From: Podarcis pityusensis
Lineage: Eukaryota
Length of the DNA: 64,000 bases
NCBI GenBank assembly: GCA_964106645.2
Contig: OZ067038.1
Direction: 5' to 3' (one strand)
The first letter of the stretch is position 1, and the number at the start of each line of letters is the position of its first letter. Positions 13,916-59,209 of the stretch are shown in pieces. The position numbers and the translations under genes were made by a program. Under the pieces are notes generated by a model that saw nothing but the letters and a program-made list of their open reading frames with translations, was not told the DNA's origin and made no database searches.

Positions 13916-14460
13916 AGGGTTAGGAACCAGACATCCATGTTTCCTGGGGACAGTCACCGGATTTACAAATCTGTCCCCGGACAAAATCCATCCCCAGAAT
14001 GTCCCCGGATTTCAATTAATGTCCCTGGATTTATATTTTAAGTGTTGTAGATTTATTATTAGGGAATGAATGTTGCGTGATTGGTTCAATGGCACAAGAC
14101 ACATCATATGGGGACTTCCAGCGAGGCAAAATGGCAGGTGCCATGGCAGTGAGCAGCTCCTGAAGCTAGCCAGAGCCAACTGCACTACTAGGCTGGCTCC
14201 GGGCTGCTGAGACTGCAGCCACCGCCACTGCTGAGAGGGAACTGGGGGCATCCGGCGCGTCAACTGGGGGAACTGCTGACCCCCCCACAACCCAAATCGA
14301 GCCGGGAGCGAGAGCACCTGGCCACCTGGCCGACTGCCCAGCAGCGCTCCGAGGCCAGGAAACACTGGAGCTGACACAGGGAGGAGGAGGAGGAGAGGAG
14401 GAGGAGAAGGAAGAGAGAGAAAGAGGAAGGAGAAAAAAGAGGGGAGCCCCAACCTTGCCG
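13916..14460 (+). mobile_element. Probable hAT-type transposon left end with a GC-rich internal segment
   Basis: Terminus resembles TAGGGTGACCAGACGTCC, followed by repeated GTCCCCGGA subterminal motifs, a GC/CpG-rich stretch and a GGA-rich tract. No right TIR found. Confidence 0.45.
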
Positions 14461-14741
14461 TTACTTCACATGGCACATAGTTACACTATGGAATTTAGTC
14501 CCAGTAAGATGTAGTAATGGCCATCAACTTAGGATGGCTTTAAAAGAGGATTAGACAAATTCATGAATTACTAGCCATGATGACCATGTACTGCCTTCAC
14601 TGTCAGAGGCGGTATGTGCCTGAATACCTGCTGGGAATCACAAGTGAGGAGAGTGCTGTTATACTCAGGATGTTGAACTAGATTGGCCTTTCCCTTGATT
14701 CAGTATGGTTCAGAACCACTGGTGCTTCATATATTCTTATG
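14461..14741 (+). mobile_element. CR1 LINE 3' end
   Basis: GATGTAGTAATGGCC..GGCTTTAAAAGAGGATTAGACAAATTCATG (typical CR1 ORF2 end) and a TTCTTATG tail unit. Confidence 0.75.
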
Positions 14742-16446
14742 ATGTTGATTTTAGTGTAAGATTTCACTAAAATGCATTATTTTCCTTCCACTTTCAGTTA
14801 AATCTTACATATTGCTTACTGGAATATTTTAATTTTGTGATCTTCCTGTTTCTCATTTTAAGGCTATAAACTCTTCTCACATTATTTAACTTTTACTTGT
14901 CTGACCACATTTCTATTTAATTTGCTCTTTATTGGCTTGCTTTCCATTTTGCATTAAACATGAATAATGCTTCATGAAATGTTGACTGAATTTGATAAAA
15001 AACATTCATATTAATGTTATATTCTGTAAGAGGCCTCTCTGATTTCTGAGAAGCAACCATAGGTTACTTACAGACTAAAAAAGAGCAACTATATCAGGAT
15101 CTAGGATTAACATACAAGTATGAAGGTAAGATTTGGAATTGTCATTTTAGATTTATGTCAAAAATTGTGTTTGCATGATCCATCTATCCAAAGTTACACT
15201 TACAAGAGTAATGTATACTTAAATCAGTATCAGTATTATTTACCTTTGTTCACTAAATCTAAACATCATACATTATTGCACATTATGTTGTAATGGTAAT
15301 TACTCTGGTGTTCATGCTTACCTATAACTCTATAACCTATTTTTTAAAATTCTTTTATTTAACTGTTATATTAACACGCAACCAAACTTGTCTGTGCAAC
15401 TATGCTTGTAATATTTTTTTTTAAATGTAAAAAATCAATAAAAATAATTTCAAACGAAACACAAAAGCAAGATAAATATGTAACTGGGTGAAAGAAATGG
15501 AAGCTAAGGCTTTTAAATGGCTACAAGAGCCCCATGATATTTGAAGCCACAGATTTCTGAACACTTTTCAACACATTCAGTCATGGTTTGGGATCAAATG
15601 TAACAGCTAGTTCTCATTAGATGTCTTAATTTGTTTGCTGAAACTGCAATTTATCATTTGGTAACCACAAGTAAGTACATGTTTCATTTGCACATTAGAT
15701 CTGGTGCAAAAGAAATGTGAGTAATGCAGTTTAATAGACCAATTCAGACTTATGATTCCAAACTGCTACATCAAGAAACTAAATTTGTCACAAAATCTGA
15801 TAACCACTAAACAGAGATAGTAAACCAAAATAAATTATTTGCCTCTAAACAACCATTGAAAGCTGCCTACAACTCTCGGTTAGACCCTACCAGGGCGGCA
15901 GAGCTTTTCAACCTATAGGCCTGTCAAAGGTTAGCATATATAGAACTGCTGTTTATTGTAATTGGAGGCAGCCGTTCATTTATCTTAAGGAAGGTTCTTT
16001 CCAATCGTATGATCAGAGATTTTTTAACTGCAGATGCCAGCAACTGAGCCAAGATCTGACACATGCAAAATAAGTGCTCCACCAATGAGCTATGGTCTCA
16101 CTTCACAAGCCCTCACAGACAGGTTACATGAATAAAAACTGTCTTATGATGAGTCAGACCACAGGTCCTTCAAATCCACTCTTGCTTACCCTGACTGGCA
16201 ACAATTCCCTAAGCCTCAATTGCGGTCTGAAATCCTTTAACGGCCAGGTATTGAACATGGAGTCTTTTGCATGCCAGTCATGTACTTCAACATTCAGCTG
16301 TGGGTTGTCCCTACTGTACAAGGAAAGTTGTAGAAATATCAATGATCGTGATGCACAGTAGCAGTTGGAGAGTTAGTGTCACTTTTGACAACAAATATTC
16401 TCGCCCCCCCTTTTTTTTAGCTGATGGGGCAAGAATTTGATTTGCA

Positions 16447-17596
16447 GGGGGCCACCAGGGGGCGCATTGGAAGATGGCCGACAATAACATCTCTCCGACC
16501 CACACGAGGTAATTAAGAGGCTGCTATGGGAAGTATGCAGCCTTCCCGCCCCCCCAAGGGGATGGGGGGGGACTGCCTTGCCAGCGGTGTCCATAATTCA
16601 CCCCCGGATTCGAAAGAAGGGGGTGTGGACACTTGGCACAAGCCCTTGTGTGAAGTCGGCTCTTCCTGACGCTGTCTCCAATTAGCACACTGGTTGCTTT
16701 GGCTCGAAATATATAATTGGAAATACATAATTGGAAAGAAGCTAAAGCACATACATCAAGCGAGGATTGGGAGTTAAGACTGCTGATTAATGGATCTCTG
16801 TGGGCGGAGCGAAGGGCGGGACAAATAAATCAAGTGATGAATCACCATTAAAAGACTGGTACGTTTGGAGTGAAACGGAAAGGGGGTGGAGGAAAAAACT
16901 TTTCTTTCTTTTTGCCCTATGTGATATTAATAACCCTCCACCCCAGAAAGAAGAATCGTTGCAACTTATTAATCACAAGCAGGAATTTAAGAACTGTGTG
17001 GAGTGAATTATTGATCAAGGAGAGGATTGGTAAACATCGGAGAACGGAGGAAAGTTTTATGACGCAGTTTCAAATGGAGTCTCGCCAAGACAGGCTTGCC
17101 TAAGAAGGACGGGGGGAGGAGGACCAGGGTCATCAGAATGCGAATGATTTTCGGAATGTGATCTAGACCTGGCAGAGCCCTCTGAGATATGTTTGGCAAG
17201 CCTGGGGAAATCAACGGACAGACTGAGGGAAAGTTTTTTACGGAGGTCTGGAAATGGCGTCTGTCCTTATGTGATATAATTTTTGGAGAGTGTAAAACCC
17301 ACACAGAGGATGTTTGTTTTTAAACCGCTTGTGAAGATTATCAGAGATCGCAAAGAAAGGAATATATGATAACAACAAGAAGATGAGAAAAGTAACAAAG
17401 AGACTATCTGGACAGAACTAGATAGAACTGTCTAATTAAATCAGTAATATAAGTGATGTTTGGACCCCTTTTCGGAGCTTGAAGTATGGGTACCCCCAAC
17501 AAAAATTTAAAAATCTGGCTGTATAATTTGGAACTAATGTGATTTGGAAATAATGTGATTTGATTGGCCTGTTAATAAAAATTATATTTAAAAAAA
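16447..17596 (+). mobile_element. Full-length non-autonomous (ORF-less) L1-type retroelement, 1150 bp
   Basis: Perfect 16-bp TSD AAGAATTTGATTTGCA (16431-16446 and 17597-17612). Starts with a G-run and AAGATGGCCG (L1 5' YY1 motif). AATAAA at 17574-17579 followed by a short poly(A). CpG-rich, with no ORF of 100 aa or more. Confidence 0.85.
16452..16480 (+). promoter_or_regulatory. CTCF consensus motif and YY1 motif at the retroelement 5' end
   Basis: CCACCAGGGGGCGC (16452-16465) matches CCASYAGRKGGCRS at 14/14. AAGATGGC at 16471-16478. GC boxes GGGCGG at 16802 and 16814. Confidence 0.65.
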
Positions 17597-18483
17597 AAGA
17601 ATTTGATTTGCAAGTTGAAGATGATTTTGGATCACCAACTGCAGTTGAATCAGCTCACATCTTGACTAAAATTGCAAGCAATGTTACGTGAGTCTTCTAA
17701 CACAAACACATACCCATTCACTTATTATAAGTGAAGTACAAACATCTGCAAAATGTTAAAAAAAACTTTTAAAAAGGAGAGGGAAAGCTCTTTTCAGAGA
17801 TTCATCTGGCAGCTGGCCCACACAAAATACCACTGCTAGTAACAGAGCTGCCTATTCTCCTTGTAAAGACTTCTAATTTGCATATTTAAATAAGTGCATG
17901 ATTGCAATTGTCCATTGCCTATCACTGAGGTTACCTAGCCAATGCTAAAACAAGGCTCATATTATCCTCCTCATTCTGAGCATACATATTGCAACCCTGT
18001 TGTTACATTCCATTTGTATCCAACTCTTTCTTCTTTGAATCTTAGTTATCACCACCTCATCGAATAGATTAAGAGGTAGCAATTGAGGGAGGGCTAGTGA
18101 TTACTCACATCATTATGTATTTCAAAGTGTGCAAAATCTGGATCAGCAATATTATTTGGAAGTATCCTTTGGCATTTGTAGAAAAAGGGCCACGTTATAA
18201 GGTTCTTGACATTTGTCTCTTCCTTGTAACTGCTGTTTTATTATTATACAGCACTAGTCTGGTTATAAACATCAGAGTATTAATAAAGGAAAATAACACA
18301 TGCAAGGTTTACAAACATTATATCTATGTTATACACTTCCTAGCAGTCCTTATTTGAGTTGCCTATTACAGTGAAAGTTTGGGGAACAAAGATCAGCCAT
18401 TATAAATTTGTGCCTAAATGCACTAAGTAAGACGGCTCGTTCCTGCAACATATTGAATACTAGAGCTCAGTTCTAGATGAAGT

Positions 18484-32079: not shown

Positions 32080-33552
32080 AGTTGTTGAGCTTATTTTAGG
32101 GTGGCGCAATGTGGTGGTGCAAGCCACAAAGAAGAATCATTTATAGCTTGCATTACATCCTCTAGTAACTGGCTAAAGGAGTTATTTTGGACCAGTTATT
32201 TGGAGGTTACTGATTCCCACTGTGGAGGAAGGGCCTCTGGAACATTTGAGGACTCACTGTGATCAACTGGCTACACATTTTAAGAATAAAGTCACTCAAC
32301 TTCAGAATGACCTTGACTCTAAAGCTGTTGCAGCTGCAAATGAAGTACCCAATGCTAGAGTCAGTGATGTGTTGTGGGATAAATTTCAGCTTACAAAGTC
32401 AGCTGAAGTGGGCAAGGTGCTAGTGGCGATATGCCTGACCACAGGCCGTCTTGACACCAATCCTCTTGGTTTATTAAATCTAACAAAGGGGGTTGACTGG
32501 TTGAGTTCAGAGTGTGGTCACTGTGTGAGGGGGTGGTCCCTGCTGCCTTGAAAGAGGTAGCATTGGGAGAGGGTTTTTTAGCCTCCTGACAGTTATGCTG
32601 TGGGATGCCACAGGGCACTACTTTATTCTCAGTGCTATTTAATATCTATATGAAGTGGCTGGGAATGGTCAGTAGGGGTGTGGGGGCAAAGTGCCATCAG
32701 TGTGCCAATGCCACAAAACTCTATTTCTCTATAACATCTAACTCAAGAGAGATCAAGCAGGCCCTGGACCAATGCCTGGATGCAATGGTGAGATGGATGA
32801 CGGAAAATAAGCTGAGCTTGAAACCTGGCAAGATGGAGGCACTGTGGGTGAGTAGTCCCTGTGTCCAAAAATTGGTCAATTGTCTTCCCTGAATAGACAA
32901 TTGCATTCCCCTTGAAGGACCAATTACTCAGTCTGGAGGTGCTTCCAGATCCAGTTTTGTCACTTGAGGTTCAGGTAGCCTCGGTGGCTAGAAGTGCCTT
33001 TTACCAGCTGTGTGCCTTATGACTGTTACTGGACAAGGACAGCTTGACAACAATAATTCAAGACTGGATTACTGCACTGCATGCTATGAAAAGGTTTCCC
33101 TTGCACTTGACTTGGAAACTGCAGTCAGTGCAGAATACTGTAGCACAGTTGCTGACAGGAGTGAGCATAAAACACCTCTGGGCCCAGTTCAATGTGGGAC
33201 TGTCTCACCCCATATGTGCACACTTGACAGCTTTTATTTGTGGAACTGGCACTGTTACACGTATAATACTTGTTCCACAGTAATAAGAAATTGAACTTTT
33301 AGTGTGGCAGCACATACACTTTGGAACTTCCTGCCTGTTGACATCAGGCAGGTGCCTCTGCTGTACTCTTTTCAGCACCTACTTAAAACATGTTTGTTTG
33401 GGCAAGCTTATCCAGACCTGTTATCCAGTATTTTAATTTCTTTTAATTTCAATTACCTTTAAATGTTTTCATTTATAATTTTAATACTTACTGTAAACCA
33501 CTTAGAAGTTTTACTGCAATCAAGCAGTATATAAATTTTGTTAAATAAAAAT
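32080..33552 (+). mobile_element. L2-clade LINE relic with an intact 3' end and an internal RT deletion
   Basis: CDQLATHFKNKV..WDKFQL; GMPQGTTLFSVLFNIYMK..CHQCANATKLYFS (degenerate YADD); WMTENKLSLKPGKME; SRLDYC; KLQSVQNTVAQLLTG. Ends TGTAAACCACTTAGA..AAGCAGTATATAAAT..AAATAAAAATA. Confidence 0.85.
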
Positions 33553-38595: not shown

Positions 38596-38751
38596 NNNNN
38601 NNNNNNNNNNNNNNNNNNNNNNNNNNNNNNNNNNNNNNNNNNNNNNNNNNNNNNNNNNNNNNNNNNNNNNNNNNNNNNNNNNNNNNNNNNNNNNNNNNNN
38701 NNNNNNNNNNNNNNNNNNNNNNNNNNNNNNNNNNNNNNNNNNNNNNNNNNN
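38596..38751. other. N-run, 156 nt
   Basis: Direct count. Confidence 0.95.
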
Positions 38752-46500: not shown

Positions 46501-47859
46501 TATTGATAAGTTTAATGAAATTTCTATTTTAATGCTGTTACTTATTCTGAGCTTTAGGATAGTGTTGATTAGAACACCAACTAGTCAGTTAACTAAATTA
46601 AGTCAAGAATTTATTTTGTTGTTTTGTTTCTTGTCTTAACATAACAAAGCAACACCATACAACCTATTTATTTATTTAATCATTTATAAGCTGTCTTTCG
46701 AAACCAAGTTCACCCAAGGCAGCAAAAAATAAATAAATGAGCATAAGAACACCATGATAGTATAATTAAAGTATATGAATTCAAACAAGCAACAACAACA
46801 CACATTAAAACATAATTCAGCCAATAAAACATAGCTCCAAAGCAACAACATGGCCAATAAAACACACACCTATCAAAAGTGGGGTAGTTTTAAAGCCTTT
46901 TTAAATAGAGCAAATGAGGGGGCCAAATGCAGCCCTAATGCACCATTACTGTAGTCTAGTCTCAATGTAACTACCGCATGCATGACTGAAGCTAGATTCG
47001 CTATGTACAATTGTATAGTTGAACAAATATGCAAATATTTCCTCTCTCTCAACTGTCACCTAGCCACGACCATTGTATCAGCAGAGGGAGAGAAGGGAAA
47101 CAGGGTCACTCCATCAGATCTGCAGAAAAGAGCTCCACTGGGCTTCTCTCCCCATCACCTGTCATCTGGTAGCAACCATTCTATCAAACTGCAGCAGAGG
47201 AAAAGATAGGAAGCAGGGCCAGCCGATAAGAGACCAACAACTTTTAGCTTTTTCTTGCTTTGAACTTTTTTTAATCCAGCTGATAATAAGAACTTTGTGA
47301 CTCAGAATAGTGCCTGAGTTTGCTTACCTCCCTTCTCTCCCCTCCCCCCGACTCTTTTCCTTTTGTGACACATACACCTGGGAGCAGGCATTTACATAAT
47401 TTCTAAACATGGGGTCCCATGATTAACCTCCCTTAATTTTGATAACAAAAATAATTTGGAGTGTCTTTCATAATTTTCAGAATGGGAATAATCTATTTTG
47501 GCACAAAACATTTTAAAAATTGGAAGAGTTTCAATCTGTTGTTCAACTTTTAATCTGGAAAAAATTGCCATGTGCTATGAACAAAATCTCTACAAGGATA
47601 TGCTTGAATCTGGTAAATCTTATAATCAGAAGTATGCCACACGGGCAGAGTAGGTTTCCTACAAAAGACAACCACTTTAGTCTTCTTGTAATTCACCTTT
47701 GCAAAAATTTCTTAAGGCAGTTATGTCTGAGACATGCTATCTGCTCATAAGAAAGCAAATCATATTATTTGCATAAAACAGTACTGATTATATTCTATTT
47801 CTCATTGCAACTGAAAGCAAAACCCTAGGCTCCGAAACAATAGCAATGAGATAAAATTT

Positions 47860-48125
47860 AAAATCAAGAGACATGCAAATATAACCCCCTGTTGAACTCC
47901 CAGTATACTTTTGCCATTCTCACAGGAGTACATGGATCTAATGTAAAATAACAACCTTTTGTCAATATTGGCATGCTGTATTTTTGCCCATAACCTGTCT
48001 CTATCTATGGAACTGAAATCTGCCTTTAGGTCAATAAAAAGTGTATACATGTAGCCTTCTTTAATGGAATATTTGTTAACCAAATGTGTAAAGGTAAATA
48101 TGCTGTCTAATGACACGAAAATTGT
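47860..48125 (-). mobile_element. Non-LTR retrotransposon RT fragment (RTE/RTE-X-like)
   Basis: ORF 47802-48116: YTLFIDLKADFSSIDRDRLWAKI..LLFYIRSMY..GVQQGVIFA matches RT motifs FIDLKxAFDSI and GVxQG, with an internal deletion. Confidence 0.7.
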
Positions 48126-48984
48126 CGTGGACCATGTTTGTTCCTTACATAAAGTAATATTTATCTAGGTGCACTCCTGTCCTACCAAACAGACATTTAG
48201 CATACAATATTCTGATTTTAAAAAGATTATACTGATAATATTCATGTTCTGACCACCTGCAATTTCCCCTGAAATACCAGAAATAAATTTTGCCTATTAA
48301 AAAGGTAGTCACCAAATTAGGTTTTGTTTATAAACAATAGTTTGGGTGGTATGTCATTTTCCCCAGGGGTGTTCTTGCTGACCAGGGAACACCCCTGCTC
48401 CTCATATACAAATTTACATAGACTGCTTGTGACACTGCTTGTGACACTTAAGGTTGGTACTCATTGCTGAAAACAGGAAAAGCAGCTCTCTCAGGCACTA
48501 TTTGGACTATGTGCCATATCAAGAGATAGACGAAACCTTGAGAATCCATAATTGCTATTTTCCAATGCTGACACTGTTATTCCTGGCTGATTCTGTGATT
48601 ATTCCACAGTCCAGCCCTGATAATGATATTTCCTGGCTTTAAAAACCCTCTTCTATTTCTTTTAATAAAATTTTGAACTTGCTTCCCTGAGTTAGACGGA
48701 TTAACCTAGCTGGCTGGGTGCCTTACCAGTTCTTTGGCTGCTTTATACTACATTCTTGAAATCATTCTTTCCCCCTCATGAATCAGAGAAGCCAACAAGC
48801 TGGAAGAAGCAAAGAAAGGTTCAAAACTACTACTGAATGTAGGAAAAGCTTGGTGAATTAAATTGGAGGAATTCTAATCCATGAATTGACTATAGCTGCT
48901 ACATCTTGGACATGAGTTTGTGCTTCAGTAGTTAAAGCCACATCCTAATTCTATCGAGAGGAGCAGAAGTGTCCTGCTCAAAAT

Positions 48985-54807: not shown

Positions 54808-54963
54808 NNNNNNNNNNNNNNNNNNNNNNNNNNNNNNNNNNNNNNNNNNNNNNNNNNNNNNNNNNNNNNNNNNNNNNNNNNNNNNNNNNNNNNNNNNNNN
54901 NNNNNNNNNNNNNNNNNNNNNNNNNNNNNNNNNNNNNNNNNNNNNNNNNNNNNNNNNNNNNNN
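54808..54963. other. N-run, 156 nt, in TE-free CNE-like context
   Basis: Direct count. Confidence 0.95.
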
Positions 54964-56439: not shown

Positions 56440-56875
56440 ACAGTTAAGAGTGCCAGCTCCATGGCTGCTAACTATTGCTGTAGAATCCTTATACAGTGGT
56501 ACCTCTGGTTGCGAATGGGATCCATTCCAGAGGCCCGTTCGCAACATGAGCAGAACGCAACCCGCATCTGCGCATCTGCGGGTCGCGATTCACCACTTCT
56601 GTGCATGATGTCATTTTGCGCATCTGCGCATGCAGCAAAACCCGGAAGTAATAGTAACCCTTTCCAGTACTTCCGGGTCGCCGCAGAACGCAACTTGAAA
56701 ACGCTCAACCTGAAGCAAATGTAACATGAGGTATGACTGTACATTTGTGTTACCAGGTTAAAAAACGGGTTTCTAAAGTTCCATTTAGTCAACAATGTTA
56801 GTATATACTTCCAATCCACTTTGTCAAATGCTTTTATGGAATCCATTGCTATTAATGCAACTAGATTTTTAATGC
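56440..56875 (-). mobile_element. L1-clade RT fragment
   Basis: LVALIAMDSIKAFDKVDWKYILTLLTKWNFRNPFFNLVTQM, continuing after MITE removal as YKDSTAIVSSHG. Matches the L1 pattern DAEKAFDxVxW..LYxxPTAxIxxNG. Confidence 0.75.
56494..56739. mobile_element. Tc1/mariner MITE inserted in an L1 RT relic
   Basis: CAGTGGTACCTC / GAGGTATGACTG with TA TSD; CpG-rich interior. Confidence 0.85.
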
Positions 56876-59077
56876 TATATATAAACTATAGACAACTCAC
56901 AACATACACTGGGATTACATTCTGGGGATAGTGCGTAAACCCCAAATTGTGTATAGTCACAACACATTGAGTTCAATGGTGGGTGGGATTGCCAAAGTCT
57001 TTTTTCCTGGATGCCCACCCCGTTTCTTTTTAAAAACTGCCAAGCATATAAAGCTGAATGGACACAACTGAAATGCACATAAGTTGTGAGTTACTTGTAT
57101 GCTATGTCTAACCTACCCCCCTTTAACAAAAAGGAACCAGCCCTTCCACCTCAGCTTGCATAGACTGGCACTTCTTAACTATGACTATTGTTACCCTCCT
57201 TGATTTAAACATGCCTGGGGCACAGAATTGATCCCCTCAATCCATATGCTGTTCAGTAAGTTATGTGTTAGCAATTTTTGGTGGATTTCCTGCAACAAAA
57301 TTATGCCTTCTCAAACATATGACATAATTCTCATGCATTTAACCGGGAAGTTCGGCCCTTTGATATTTATCAACAAGGCCTTTAGTAAGTTCTGGCTTCG
57401 TGGAATTACCATAGTTTCATGCTGTTGAGAGTCTAGGAACTTGAACCATTCTGTCTCATAATTTGAAGTGGGAGAGCATTGGACTCTGTCGGAACTAACT
57501 TGAATGAATACAGTTAATTTGGAAAGCTTTTGTTATTTGATCTACTCTTGTATTAGTCTGCCCTGTTAAGGACCTGAGTGTAGAGTTCTCTCAACACTTC
57601 TGTACTTCATAGAACAGAACCATAGAATTGTAGGTTGTTCAAAGGATGTAAAACATTTCATACTCTTCCTTTGGCTTTCTCTTTGAAACTATTCATACAA
57701 GGTGACAATTCACATCAATAAAGATAACTGGCTTTGCCTGAACCACCAGTTTAGCCTACCTAATGAAGGTATGTTGGCTCCATAAAAATATTGATAGCTG
57801 GTGTGATGTGTTCCTGGAGAGTATGGCCTCTTCAAGACATCTAACTTAGCATTTTCTTTTTCTTTTTCTTCTGGTCCGCAGAGACTAATCTACTGGTTCT
57901 TCATTTAGTGAGTAATTTGATCTTTAGCTAGTGCCTCAACTCCAGGTTTATTGCTTCTTCCATTTTTTTTGAAATATCCATCAGTTCTGATAAAATACCT
58001 ATTTTGCTTCCAGAGCGGTCAGTGCTGTTGTCAGCACGGCTGCCCAGGCTACCAGCAGGTTGCTTCTCACCTGCTGACTCAGTGAGGTGATACCTCAAGC
58101 TACTGACATGGTGTTAGTCAATTTCACATCCTTAAACATTTTAGCACTTTCTTTCACCATTATAGTTTCCTTCTCCTCCCTCAAGTATTCTGAACTGTCA
58201 AAAAAGTTTTCTCTGGTGATATTCCATTTCAGAACTTTATTGGCCTTTCATTGTATCCTTCCATCAACTGGACCTATGCTTTTAGAAGTTTAACCTTGCT
58301 TTAAAGATTCCCTTTAAAAGTTGTAGCCCTTTAAAACTTGGAGATTTGTGGAGCCCAATGATTAGGCTGCCATTTTGCCTGATAGGCCACACACACACAG
58401 CCTCTCTCACACAACCCTTCTGGTTACTGCTCCCTGGGATGTGCTTGCATGATGAAACACATTTGTGATGAAGCTTCAGATGTGACCCTATACACAATTT
58501 GTGTGCATTCCATCTATAACAAGTTGCCTTCAATTATGTGGAAATCTGAAAATCCTGAAGTAACTGCCCATTGATAAAGTCTGCATTCAGAAACCCAGAT
58601 TTATCTATCAGACACAATTCTTGATTTTCCTGACTTTCCTAATGAGCAGGATATAATACCGTAGAAATAAACAAAACAAAAAATAAAATGTTCTTGGGGG
58701 ACAATATAGTTTTTAAGAATTATTAATCCTTATGGAATAACGTCAGTCAGAAAATAAAAAAAGGATTCAGAAGACCAGGCAAAGCAGGTTTAAAATGATT
58801 ATGAAAACTCATGCTAACAATCAAATGATTTACACTGAGGAAAGGAGGGAGTATTAGCTGTATACATAAGTATACAAATTTGTGGCAGTGATGCTAGTTT
58901 TAGACAGAATAAAGTACTGTGAATTTGGCAGTATCAGTCTCTGAACCTTCCCAGCAGCATAAGAAAATTCATATATCACAGGGCTACTGAGATAAAGTAA
59001 TGCTCAGCCCTAGAGGGCACAGATTTCGTCTTTATGTAAATCAGTGCCTGTCACTGCATGCATGATTCACTGCTCAG

Positions 59078-59209
59078 NNNNNNNNNNNNNNNNNNNNNNN
59101 NNNNNNNNNNNNNNNNNNNNNNNNNNNNNNNNNNNNNNNNNNNNNNNNNNNNNNNNNNNNNNNNNNNNNNNNNNNNNNNNNNNNNNNNNNNNNNNNNNNN
59201 NNNNNNNNN
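59078..59209. other. N-run, 132 nt, in TE-free CNE-like context
   Basis: Direct count. Confidence 0.95.

What the first reader, a model, noticed from the sequence alone, without database searches (positions are those of the whole stretch)
16431..17612. Complete ORF-less 1.15-kb L1-type retroelement: a candidate undescribed non-autonomous family
Seen: a perfect 16-bp TSD; a 5' end GGGGGCC..GGAAGATGGCCGAC resembling the L1 5' start (human L1 begins GGGGGAGGAGCCAAGATGGCCGAA); GC boxes; retained CpGs; AATAAA plus poly(A); and no ORF1/ORF2 or tRNA/7SL head. Known: TSD plus poly(A) are products of L1 target-primed reverse transcription, and short L1 copies are normally 5'-truncated. Inference: this copy keeps both ends and lacks the whole coding middle. 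It would be a Pol II-promoter, SINE-like parasite of L1 (5'UTR fused to 3' tail), recently inserted antisense to MEIS2.
Basis: partly seen in the sequence, partly recalled or inferred. Interest (0 to 1): 0.8.

Follow-up and report, generated by a model that had tools for sequence, protein, structure and literature searches.

The report
Non-coding poly(A) retroposon family copy
This 1.15-kb insert is one young copy of a real, multi-copy, protein-less jumping element that almost certainly borrows the copying enzyme of LINE-1 elements; that is a known lifestyle, but I found no published description of this lizard family.

Summary
Window 16447-17596 is a 1150-bp insert between perfect 16-bp direct repeats. 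It ends in AATAAA plus a short A-run. It has no ORF over 83 codons on its own strand and no Pfam, Rfam or tRNA match.

Public read sets settle the main question.
- A related organism carries the exact empty site with a single copy of the 16-mer.
- Two other read sets carry the filled site.
- About 1150-2300 contigs per genomic run match the insert at 88-100%, against single-copy flanks.
- Dozens of contigs start at the same first base behind unrelated flanks.

So it is a family, not a processed pseudogene or a one-off L1 deletion. The first ~105 bp and last ~150-280 bp are roughly 15-20 times deeper than the middle, so head and tail are shared with more abundant relatives.

Not shown: that head and tail come from an autonomous L1, that RNA polymerase II transcribes it, that it is expressed, or that Dfam/Repbase lack it.

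The scan's first readers noted at least three other ~1.15-kb copies with the same head in this genome (s1-717134, s1-722554, s1-732245), plus 1.8-2.4-kb RT-less relatives. I could not check those notes.

Verdict: new member of a known kind, of moderate interest.

The parts
16431..16446 (+). left copy of the 16-bp target-site duplication
   Evidence: Identical to 17597-17612. Present once in the empty site of a related organism (joint 16430->17597).
16447..17596 (+). the 1150-bp non-coding retroposon copy
   Evidence: Absent from the orthologous site in run X5 and present in X1 and X3. About 1150-2300 contigs per genomic run match it at 88-100%. No ORF, Pfam, Rfam or tRNA match.
16447..16551 (+). 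head module: G-run start, GC-rich, the most abundant part of the family
   Evidence: Summed word depth about 78,000-81,000 against about 22-25 in the flanks in X1, with the same pattern in X3 and X5. Loose ends at exactly 16447 in 39 (X1) and 27 (X5) contigs with non-agreeing upstream letters. GC 0.58. Folding is no better than shuffles, z -0.25.
16452..16465 (+). CTCF-type core motif CCACCAGGGGGCGC
   Evidence: The only match to CCASYAGRKGGCRS in 64 kb; 0.03 expected. A family variant reads CCACTA at the same place (loose ends at 16459). Binding was not tested.
16471..16479 (+). YY1-type box AAGATGGCC, 25 nt from the first base
   Evidence: Sequence. Not enriched in the window. Any role in fixing the start site is inferred by analogy with human L1 (PMC11602158).
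16802..16819 (+). two GC boxes (GGGCGG at 16802 and 16814); a third, CCGCCC, at 16546
16552..17310 (+). middle body, specific to this ~1.15-kb family
   Evidence: Summed word depth 2,700-6,200 in X1, roughly 110-250 times the flank and 15-20 times below head and tail. Contiguous 388-bp and 332-bp matches occur in contigs of another organism (X16), and deletion variants are seen.
17031..17083 (+). first copy of a ~55-nt internal direct repeat (second copy 17208-17262, period ~177)
   Evidence: Local alignment score 30 against 13.5 +/- 2.4 in 300 shuffles, none reaching it. Each copy holds an AAATGG(A/C)G box.
17208..17262 (+). second copy of the internal direct repeat
17311..17589 (+). tail module, AT-rich and as abundant as the head
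   Evidence: Depth 11,000-74,000 in X1, highest at 17449-17586. GC 0.31. Contains a 16-bp unit repeated 2.3 times at 17526-17562. Folding is no better than shuffles.
17574..17579 (+). polyadenylation signal AATAAA, 10 nt before the A-run
17590..17596 (+). A-tail (7 A; 9 with the two A that also begin the duplication)
17597..17612 (+). right copy of the target-site duplication

Best explanation
The insert is one fairly young, full-length copy of a non-coding, non-autonomous retroposon family. The family is shared by a group of related lizards.

Proposed mechanism:
1. The element is transcribed from its own first base by a promoter carried inside its GC-rich head (inferred; probably RNA polymerase II).
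2. The RNA is cleaved and polyadenylated after its own AATAAA.
3. A LINE-encoded endonuclease/reverse transcriptase, most likely that of L1, copies the RNA into a nicked chromosomal site by target-primed reverse transcription. This leaves the A-tail and the 16-bp duplication.

Head and tail are the conserved, widely shared modules. The middle is specific to this ~1.15-kb family.

Shown: that it is an insertion, that it belongs to a family, the common 5' terminus, and the lack of coding capacity. Inferred: the polymerase, the L1 driver and the origin.
For: - Insertion: there is an empty site with one copy of the 16-mer in run X5, whose flanks differ by about 2-4%. Filled sites with 0-2 flank differences occur in X1 and X3, which come from two studies.
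- Family: 1946, 1154 and 2326 contigs were laid in X1, X3 and X5. In X1, 367 of these were at >=99% identity, 690 at 95-99% and 754 at 90-95%. Insert-to-flank depth ratios are of order 10^2 for the middle and 10^3 for head and tail. Runs of six differently coded organisms (A-F) each hold 0.36-0.57 of the sampled words.
- Common 5' terminus: 39 and 27 contigs match from exactly 16447 behind unrelated flanks.
- L1-type hallmarks: a 16-bp duplication, AATAAA plus an A-tail, and a nick site reading TTCTT/G on the primed strand.
- Non-coding.
- Not Pol III: no tRNA or Rfam head, and eight runs of four or more T on the sense strand, including T6.
- Youth: CpG observed/expected 0.60 against 0.19 in the flanks, and perfect duplications.
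- Unchecked scan notes describe other ~1.15-kb copies with the same head.
Against: - No autonomous L1 with the same head or tail was found, so the driver rests on hallmarks only.
- The nick site is only a loose fit to TTTT/AA.
- The A-tail is short.
- The depth ratios come from summed contig depths, which the tool warns are not copy numbers.
- No contig spans the whole 1150 bp, so I did not directly see that other copies share the full architecture.
- Transcription is not shown. The only RNA-labelled runs are guesses, and low-coverage DNA would give the same picture.
Confidence: 0.8

Rival explanations
1. Origin by internal deletion. The family is an L1, or one of this genome's 1.8-2.4-kb 'mini-L1' derivatives, that lost its whole coding middle and kept the L1 5'UTR start and 3'UTR. 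This is the reader's reading, and it mirrors RIME, which is ingi without its central 4.7 kb. It refines the best explanation rather than opposing it.
For: - Head and tail are 15-20 times deeper than the middle, as expected if they are shared with other elements.
- The YY1-type box lies near the first base, as in human L1 (PMC11602158).
- Scan notes describe many RT-less elements of 1.8-2.4 kb in this genome, said to keep L1 ends (unchecked).
- The four listed family variants inside the sense frame 17186-17320 all fall on third codon positions, and three are synonymous (my count). That frame stops where the deep tail begins.
Against: - The 45-codon frame has no relative among 1.84 billion proteins and no Pfam match.
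- The only L1-like fragment in the window (56475-56885, minus strand) shares nothing with the insert.
- The head is as deep as the tail, whereas L1 copies are usually truncated at the 5' end.
- The codon pattern has p about 0.01 before correcting for about five frames examined.
Confidence: 0.4
2. Independent origin. A host RNA polymerase II transcript, a lncRNA or UTR-rich mRNA with a downstream-acting promoter, became retro-competent and founded the family. It would then have no sequence kinship to L1.
For: - There is no recognisable L1 coding remnant.
- No similarity to the window's L1 fragment.
- The head looks like a CpG-containing promoter with GC boxes.
Against: - A transcript normally loses its promoter on retroposition. 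Hundreds of copies with one exact 5' terminus need an internal promoter, which is typical of LINE 5'UTRs.
- Head and tail behave as separate, more abundant modules.
Confidence: 0.2
3. Single-copy processed pseudogene of a cellular RNA, or a one-off internal deletion of a single L1 copy.
For: The duplication, AATAAA and A-tail also fit a processed pseudogene. The insert is single-copy within the window.
Against: - Thousands of matching contigs appear in each of three organisms.
- Depth is 10^2-10^3 times that of the flanks.
- Dozens of independent 5' junctions are seen.
Confidence: 0.02
4. A long Pol III SINE, or an element mobilised by a non-L1 LINE (CR1, L2 or RTE/Bov-B).
For: Squamate genomes hold active CR1, L2 and Bov-B elements with partner SINEs (established knowledge). 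RT fragments of non-L1 type occur in the window.
Against: - No tRNA, 7SL or 5S head.
- The sense strand has T4-T6 runs that would stop Pol III.
- Partners of CR1, L2 and RTE end in short repeats, not AATAAA plus an A-run, and make short duplications or none (established knowledge).
Confidence: 0.05

Closest known systems
RIME/ingi and NARTc/L1Tc pairs of trypanosomes (PMC2323293, PMC3383444)
   Same: A short, non-coding partner carries the 5' start (an internal promoter) and an A-rich 3' end. It has its own duplications, a copy number like or above the autonomous element's, and a 5' signature shared by otherwise unrelated families.
   Different: Different LINE clade and host. RIME's identity with both ends of ingi is demonstrated, whereas here no partner has been seen. 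This element has a 760-bp body of its own.
SVA and its gibbon relatives LAVA/PVA/FVA (PMC3287187, PMC5753468)
   Same: An ORF-less, kilobase-sized element with AATAAA, an A-tail and L1-type duplications. It is not a Pol III SINE, is mobilised in trans by L1, and is restricted to a lineage.
   Different: SVA is a composite of a hexamer repeat, an Alu-like part, a VNTR and an ERV part. None of these occurs here; there are only 14-bp and 16-bp micro-duplications and one ~55-nt internal repeat.
HAL1, the 'half-L1' of mammals (PMC5753468), and the 1.8-2.4-kb RT-less elements noted in this genome (scan notes, unchecked)
   Same: Non-autonomous, poly(A)-ended L1-type elements lacking reverse transcriptase.
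   Different: HAL1 and the 2-kb elements keep one ORF. This element has none.
CTCF-motif-carrying SINEs such as rodent B2 (own knowledge, not checked here)
   Same: A dispersed retroposon carrying a strong CTCF-type core in every full-length copy.
   Different: B2 is a tRNA-derived Pol III SINE. CTCF binding to this head is untested.

Membership tests
L1-mobilised non-autonomous poly(A) retroposon | Insertion flanked by a target-site duplication of about 7-20 bp, with an empty site elsewhere | tested here: met
   Perfect 16-bp duplication. Exact empty site in run X5.
L1-mobilised non-autonomous poly(A) retroposon | 3' end formed by a polyadenylation signal and an A-tail | tested here: met
   AATAAA at 17574-17579 and an A-run at 17590-17598. 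The tail is short, 7-9 A.
L1-mobilised non-autonomous poly(A) retroposon | Many copies at different sites | tested here: met
   About 1150-2300 matching contigs per genomic run. 39 and 27 independent 5' junctions at 16447.
L1-mobilised non-autonomous poly(A) retroposon | No reverse transcriptase or endonuclease of its own | tested here: met
   Longest sense open stretch is 83 codons. No Pfam match. No protein relatives.
L1-mobilised non-autonomous poly(A) retroposon | Nick at an L1 endonuclease site (TTTT/AA type) | tested here: inconclusive
   The primed strand reads TTCTT/GC at this copy. Upstream flanks of other copies are A-rich, but their consensus agreement is low at 0.41.
L1-mobilised non-autonomous poly(A) retroposon | An active L1 in the same genome | not tested
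   Only an old L1-like RT fragment lies in the window (56475-56885, RVT_1 E 0.0095). Scan notes mention intact L1 frames elsewhere (unchecked).
Internal-deletion derivative of L1 (RIME-like) | 5' and 3' ends alignable to an autonomous L1 | not testable with these tools
   There is no access to the source genome. The collection scans found nothing.
Internal-deletion derivative of L1 (RIME-like) | Remnant of L1 coding sequence at the deletion junction | tested here: not met
   No Pfam match for any open stretch. The 45-codon frame next to the tail has no relative in 1.84 billion proteins.
Pol III SINE | Head derived from tRNA, 7SL or 5S RNA, with no internal T-run terminators | tested here: not met
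   ARAGORN found 0 genes. Rfam gave 0 matches at E<=1. Eight sense-strand runs of four or more T.
SVA-like composite | Hexamer repeat, SINE-derived part, VNTR, LTR-derived part | tested here: not met
   Only two 2.3-copy micro-repeats and one ~55-nt repeat.
HAL1 / ORF1-only L1 derivative | An intact ORF1-like frame | tested here: not met
Processed pseudogene | Single or few copies derived from a spliced parent gene | tested here: not met
   High copy number and a shared 5' terminus.

The most novel reading that the evidence does not exclude
Related lizards, said by scan notes to be lacertids, carry a family of protein-less L1 parasites driven by RNA polymerase II. Their ~105-bp head, a CTCF-type core 5 nt from a YY1-type box, is a portable promoter shared by several non-autonomous families. 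It has been spread to roughly a thousand sites, making it a squamate counterpart of SVA or RIME that also seeds CTCF/YY1 sites.
Probability: 0.2. Interest if true: 0.65.

Novelty: new member of a known kind. Interest (0 to 1): 0.45.

Why it matters
ORF-less retroposons that are not Pol III SINEs are well studied only in apes (SVA and its relatives) and in trypanosomes (RIME, NARTc).

A young, abundant family of this sort in lizards has several uses.
- It offers a second vertebrate system for asking how an RNA with no protein of its own gains access to the L1 machinery, despite L1's preference for its own RNA.
- Together with the RT-less 2-kb elements noted in the same genome, it suggests a graded series of L1 parasites in one genome.
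- Every full-length copy carries a strong CTCF-type motif at its tip, so recent insertions such as this one, in an intron of a developmental homeobox gene, are candidates for lineage-specific changes in chromatin looping.
- The insertion is itself a clean presence/absence marker between related species.

Tried and rejected
- Other copies in the window: none; BLASTN with word size 9 gave only chance hits.
- Rfam at E<=1 and ARAGORN: nothing.
- RNA folds of head and tail on both strands: z from -1.26 to +1.18, so no thermodynamic sign of a structured RNA.
- Tandem repeats: only two 2.3-copy micro-repeats. A self-BLAST found no large internal repeat. A ~55-nt repeat showed up only by direct alignment.
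- Fetching other copies through spurious ORFs: word protein searches with the 98-aa antisense ORF and the 77-aa sense ORF were blank.
- Fetching lizard L1 loci through the window's old L1 RT fragment: blank. No other L1 piece lies in the window.
- The big HMMER search with the 45-codon sense frame 17186-17320: 0 hits at E<=0.001.
- Exact-pattern scans for the head in metagenome contigs (twice) and in bacterial/archaeal genomes: 0, as expected for animal DNA.
- Findings search by sequence: blank.
- Literature: four searches for a lizard or lacertid L1-dependent non-coding family found no description.
- The bacterial-type promoter scan is irrelevant to this genome.
- A 208-codon open stretch at 710-1333 looked like it might be one of the scan's 2-kb elements. 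It shares nothing with the insert and was dropped.
- I built no consensus of the family and left the N stretches untouched.
Full report
**1. What is in the sequence**

- AAGAATTTGATTTGCA occurs at 16431-16446 and again at 17597-17612, 16 of 16 identical.
- Between the two copies lie 1150 bp (16447-17596).
- The insert begins with a G-run and a GC-rich 250 bp (GC 0.58).
- It ends with AATAAA at 17574-17579, ten further bases and an A-run at 17590-17598.
- It holds 31 CpGs, observed/expected 0.60. The 2-kb flanks and the whole window stand at 0.12-0.19.
- GC boxes lie at 16546, 16802 and 16814.

The insert shows no sign of coding or of a known small-RNA head.
- The three sense frames hold 60 stops, and the longest open stretch is 83 codons. 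The longest ORF on either strand is 98 aa, on the antisense strand.
- No open stretch matches a Pfam family.
- Rfam gives nothing at E<=1 and ARAGORN finds no tRNA.
- Within the window the insert is single-copy.

**2. It is an insertion, and it belongs to a family**

I laid the contigs of four public runs on 16000-18050.
- Run X1 has contigs with zero differences that run from the left flank 29 nt into the insert, and from 17574 into the right flank.
- Run X3 comes from another study and another organism code. It shows the same two junctions with 0 and 2 differences.
- Run X5 comes from a third organism code, and its flanks differ by about 2-4%. It has one 2726-bp contig that joins 16430 directly to 17597. 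It skips 1166 bp, with 16 letters that fit either side.

The X5 contig is the empty site with a single copy of the 16-mer. The direct repeat is therefore a true target-site duplication, and the insertion is younger than the split between these organisms.

The same call shows that the insert is repetitive.
- X1, X3 and X5 gave 1946, 1154 and 2326 matching contigs at 88-100% identity. In X1, 367 were at 99% or more, 690 at 95-99% and 754 at 90-95%.
- Summed word depth over the insert is 2,700-81,000 in X1, against 22-25 in the flanks. X3 and X5 show the same contrast.
- The tool warns that summed depth is not a copy number, so I use it only for order of magnitude: about 10^2 for the middle (16552-17310) and about 10^3 for the first ~105 bp and the last ~150 bp.
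- In X1, 39 contigs start to match exactly at 16447 behind long, mutually unrelated upstream sequence (consensus agreement 0.41). In X5, 27 do.
- A further 22 contigs in X1 and 16 in X3 diverge at 16459, because their head reads CCACTA instead of CCACCA.

The family therefore has a defined 5' terminus at many different sites.

Runs of six differently coded organisms (A-F) each hold 0.36-0.57 of the sampled words. The family is as abundant in the organism with the empty site as in the others. It therefore predates that split and stayed active after it.

**3. Anatomy**

The depth profile divides the element into three parts.
- A head at 16447-16551.
- A body at 16552-17310, which is 15-20 times less deep.
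- A tail at 17311-17589, deepest at 17449-17586.

There are two possible reasons for the profile. Head and tail may be shared with more abundant relatives, or they may be much better conserved than the body, so that more copies pass the 88% filter. In both cases the ends are the constrained parts.

The head carries CCACCAGGGGGCGC at 16452-16465. This is the only match to the CTCF core consensus in 64 kb, where 0.03 is expected. Five bases on lies AAGATGGCC, a YY1-type box. That box is not rarer than chance as a motif; only its position is suggestive.

In the body, a ~55-nt stretch at 17031-17083 recurs at 17208-17262. The alignment scores 30, against 13.5 +/- 2.4 in shuffles. Each copy holds an AAATGG(A/C)G box. 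Deletion variants of the body exist in other copies (joints).

Neither head nor tail folds better than shuffled sequence.

**4. How it most likely works**

Shown: the insertion, the duplication, the A-tail after AATAAA, the lack of any enzyme gene, and many copies with one 5' end.

From established knowledge of target-primed reverse transcription, an RNA was copied into a staggered nick. The primed strand reads TTCTT/GC here, a loose fit to the L1 preference TTTT/AA.

Among vertebrate LINE clades, L1 is the one that leaves A-tails after a polyadenylation signal together with 7-20-bp duplications. CR1, L2 and RTE partners end in short repeats. This is why I name L1 as the driver. It is an inference: I could not fetch an autonomous partner.

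An element that keeps an exact 5' end through hundreds of retropositions must carry a promoter downstream of its own start site. Two observations speak against RNA polymerase III: there is no Pol III head, and the sense strand has eight runs of four or more T, including T6. The CpG-containing head with GC boxes and the YY1-type box suggests Pol II. In human L1, YY1 binds near the 5' end and sets the start site (PMC11602158).

Expression is not shown. The runs labelled RNA are guesses. Coverage of the repeat without coverage of the flanks (X16) is also what low-coverage DNA would give.

**5. Origin**

I could not test this directly.

In favour:
- The head, body and tail depth profile.
- Scan notes describe many 1.8-2.4-kb RT-less elements in this genome, said to keep L1 ends and an ORF1::ORF2-tail fusion. 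Follow-up agents called two of them a real family in wall-lizard relatives. I have not checked any of this.
- The four best-supported family variants inside the sense frame 17186-17320 (17212, 17236, 17248, 17278) all fall on third codon positions, and three are synonymous. That frame stops where the deep tail starts (my count). The chance of this is about 0.01 before allowing for the roughly five frames I looked at.

Against:
- That 45-codon frame has no relative among 1.84 billion representative proteins and no Pfam match.
- The window's only L1-like fragment shares nothing with the insert.

I put the deletion origin at about 0.4 and an independent origin from a host transcript at about 0.2. 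The rest is undecided.

**6. Setting**

A 26-residue exon on the minus strand at 5244-5321 matches the TALE Homeobox_KN domain at E 7e-12. The host gene therefore runs on the minus strand, and the insert lies antisense, upstream of that exon in gene orientation, presumably in an intron.

The peptide does not tell MEIS2 from MEIS1.

**7. Comparison with what is known, and novelty**

- In architecture the closest parallels are RIME/ingi and NARTc/L1Tc of trypanosomes. These are short non-coding partners that keep the 5' promoter signature and the A-rich end of the autonomous element (PMC2323293, PMC3383444).
- In lifestyle the closest vertebrate parallel is SVA, an ORF-less, kilobase-sized, L1-mobilised element (PMC3287187, PMC5753468). 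None of SVA's component parts is present here.
- HAL1 keeps ORF1 (PMC5753468). This element keeps no ORF.

Four literature searches found no description of such a family in lizards. Dfam and Repbase could not be consulted, and automatic libraries may already hold it as an unclassified repeat.

The scan itself noted at least three other ~1.15-kb copies with the same head in this genome (s1-717134, s1-722554, s1-732245). Four notes in about 602 windows of 64 kb scale to roughly 140 copies per 1.4 Gb. That agrees with the depth ratio of the body, but it rests on unchecked notes.

**8. Verdict**

The reading as a complete, ORF-less, non-autonomous retroposon family is supported. Derivation from L1, Pol II transcription and "undescribed" remain open. 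It is a new member of a known kind. Interest is moderate (0.45): this is a useful second vertebrate example of a protein-less L1 parasite and a carrier of CTCF-type motifs, but the mechanism would not surprise a specialist.

Noticed in passing
window 16452-16465: The CTCF-type core at the tip of the element is the only match to the core consensus in the whole 64-kb window (0.03 expected). A common family variant, CCACTA, keeps the motif. Every full-length copy would carry it.
   Followed up: partly
window 17186-17320 (+): The four best-supported family variants listed in this 45-codon sense frame all sit on third codon positions, and three are synonymous. The frame's stop coincides with the start of the deep tail. 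No protein relative was found, so this is unexplained or chance.
   Followed up: partly
window 14100-14500: A GC-rich island (GC 0.57-0.68) lies about 2 kb from the insertion, inside the same intron-like stretch. Long open stretches on both strands look compositional. Nature unknown.
   Followed up: no
window 5244-5321 (-): A TALE homeobox exon (Homeobox_KN, E 7e-12) of a MEIS-type gene. The adjacent homeodomain exons were not found and may lie in the N stretches.
   Followed up: partly
window 3949-4735, 8608-8739, 38596-38751, 54808-54963, 59078-59209: Five runs of N. Four of them, at 132 or 156 bp, are exon-sized.
   Followed up: no
window 56475-56885 (-); 32590-32889 (+); 47805-48164 (-): Old reverse-transcriptase fragments. 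The first is L1-like (RVT_1, E 0.0095). By eye the other two look like non-L1 LINE reverse transcriptases. None shares sequence with the insert.
   Followed up: partly
window 16400-16419: A C8-T8 homopolymer pair (…CGCCCCCCCCTTTTTTTT…) sits 12 bp upstream of the target site. Its relevance to target choice is unknown.
   Followed up: no
run X16, joint 16546->16775: In the runs guessed to be RNA, the deepest contig (depth 433) joins the head directly to 16775, skipping 228 bp. A shorter family variant may be the abundant or expressed form in that organism.
   Followed up: no
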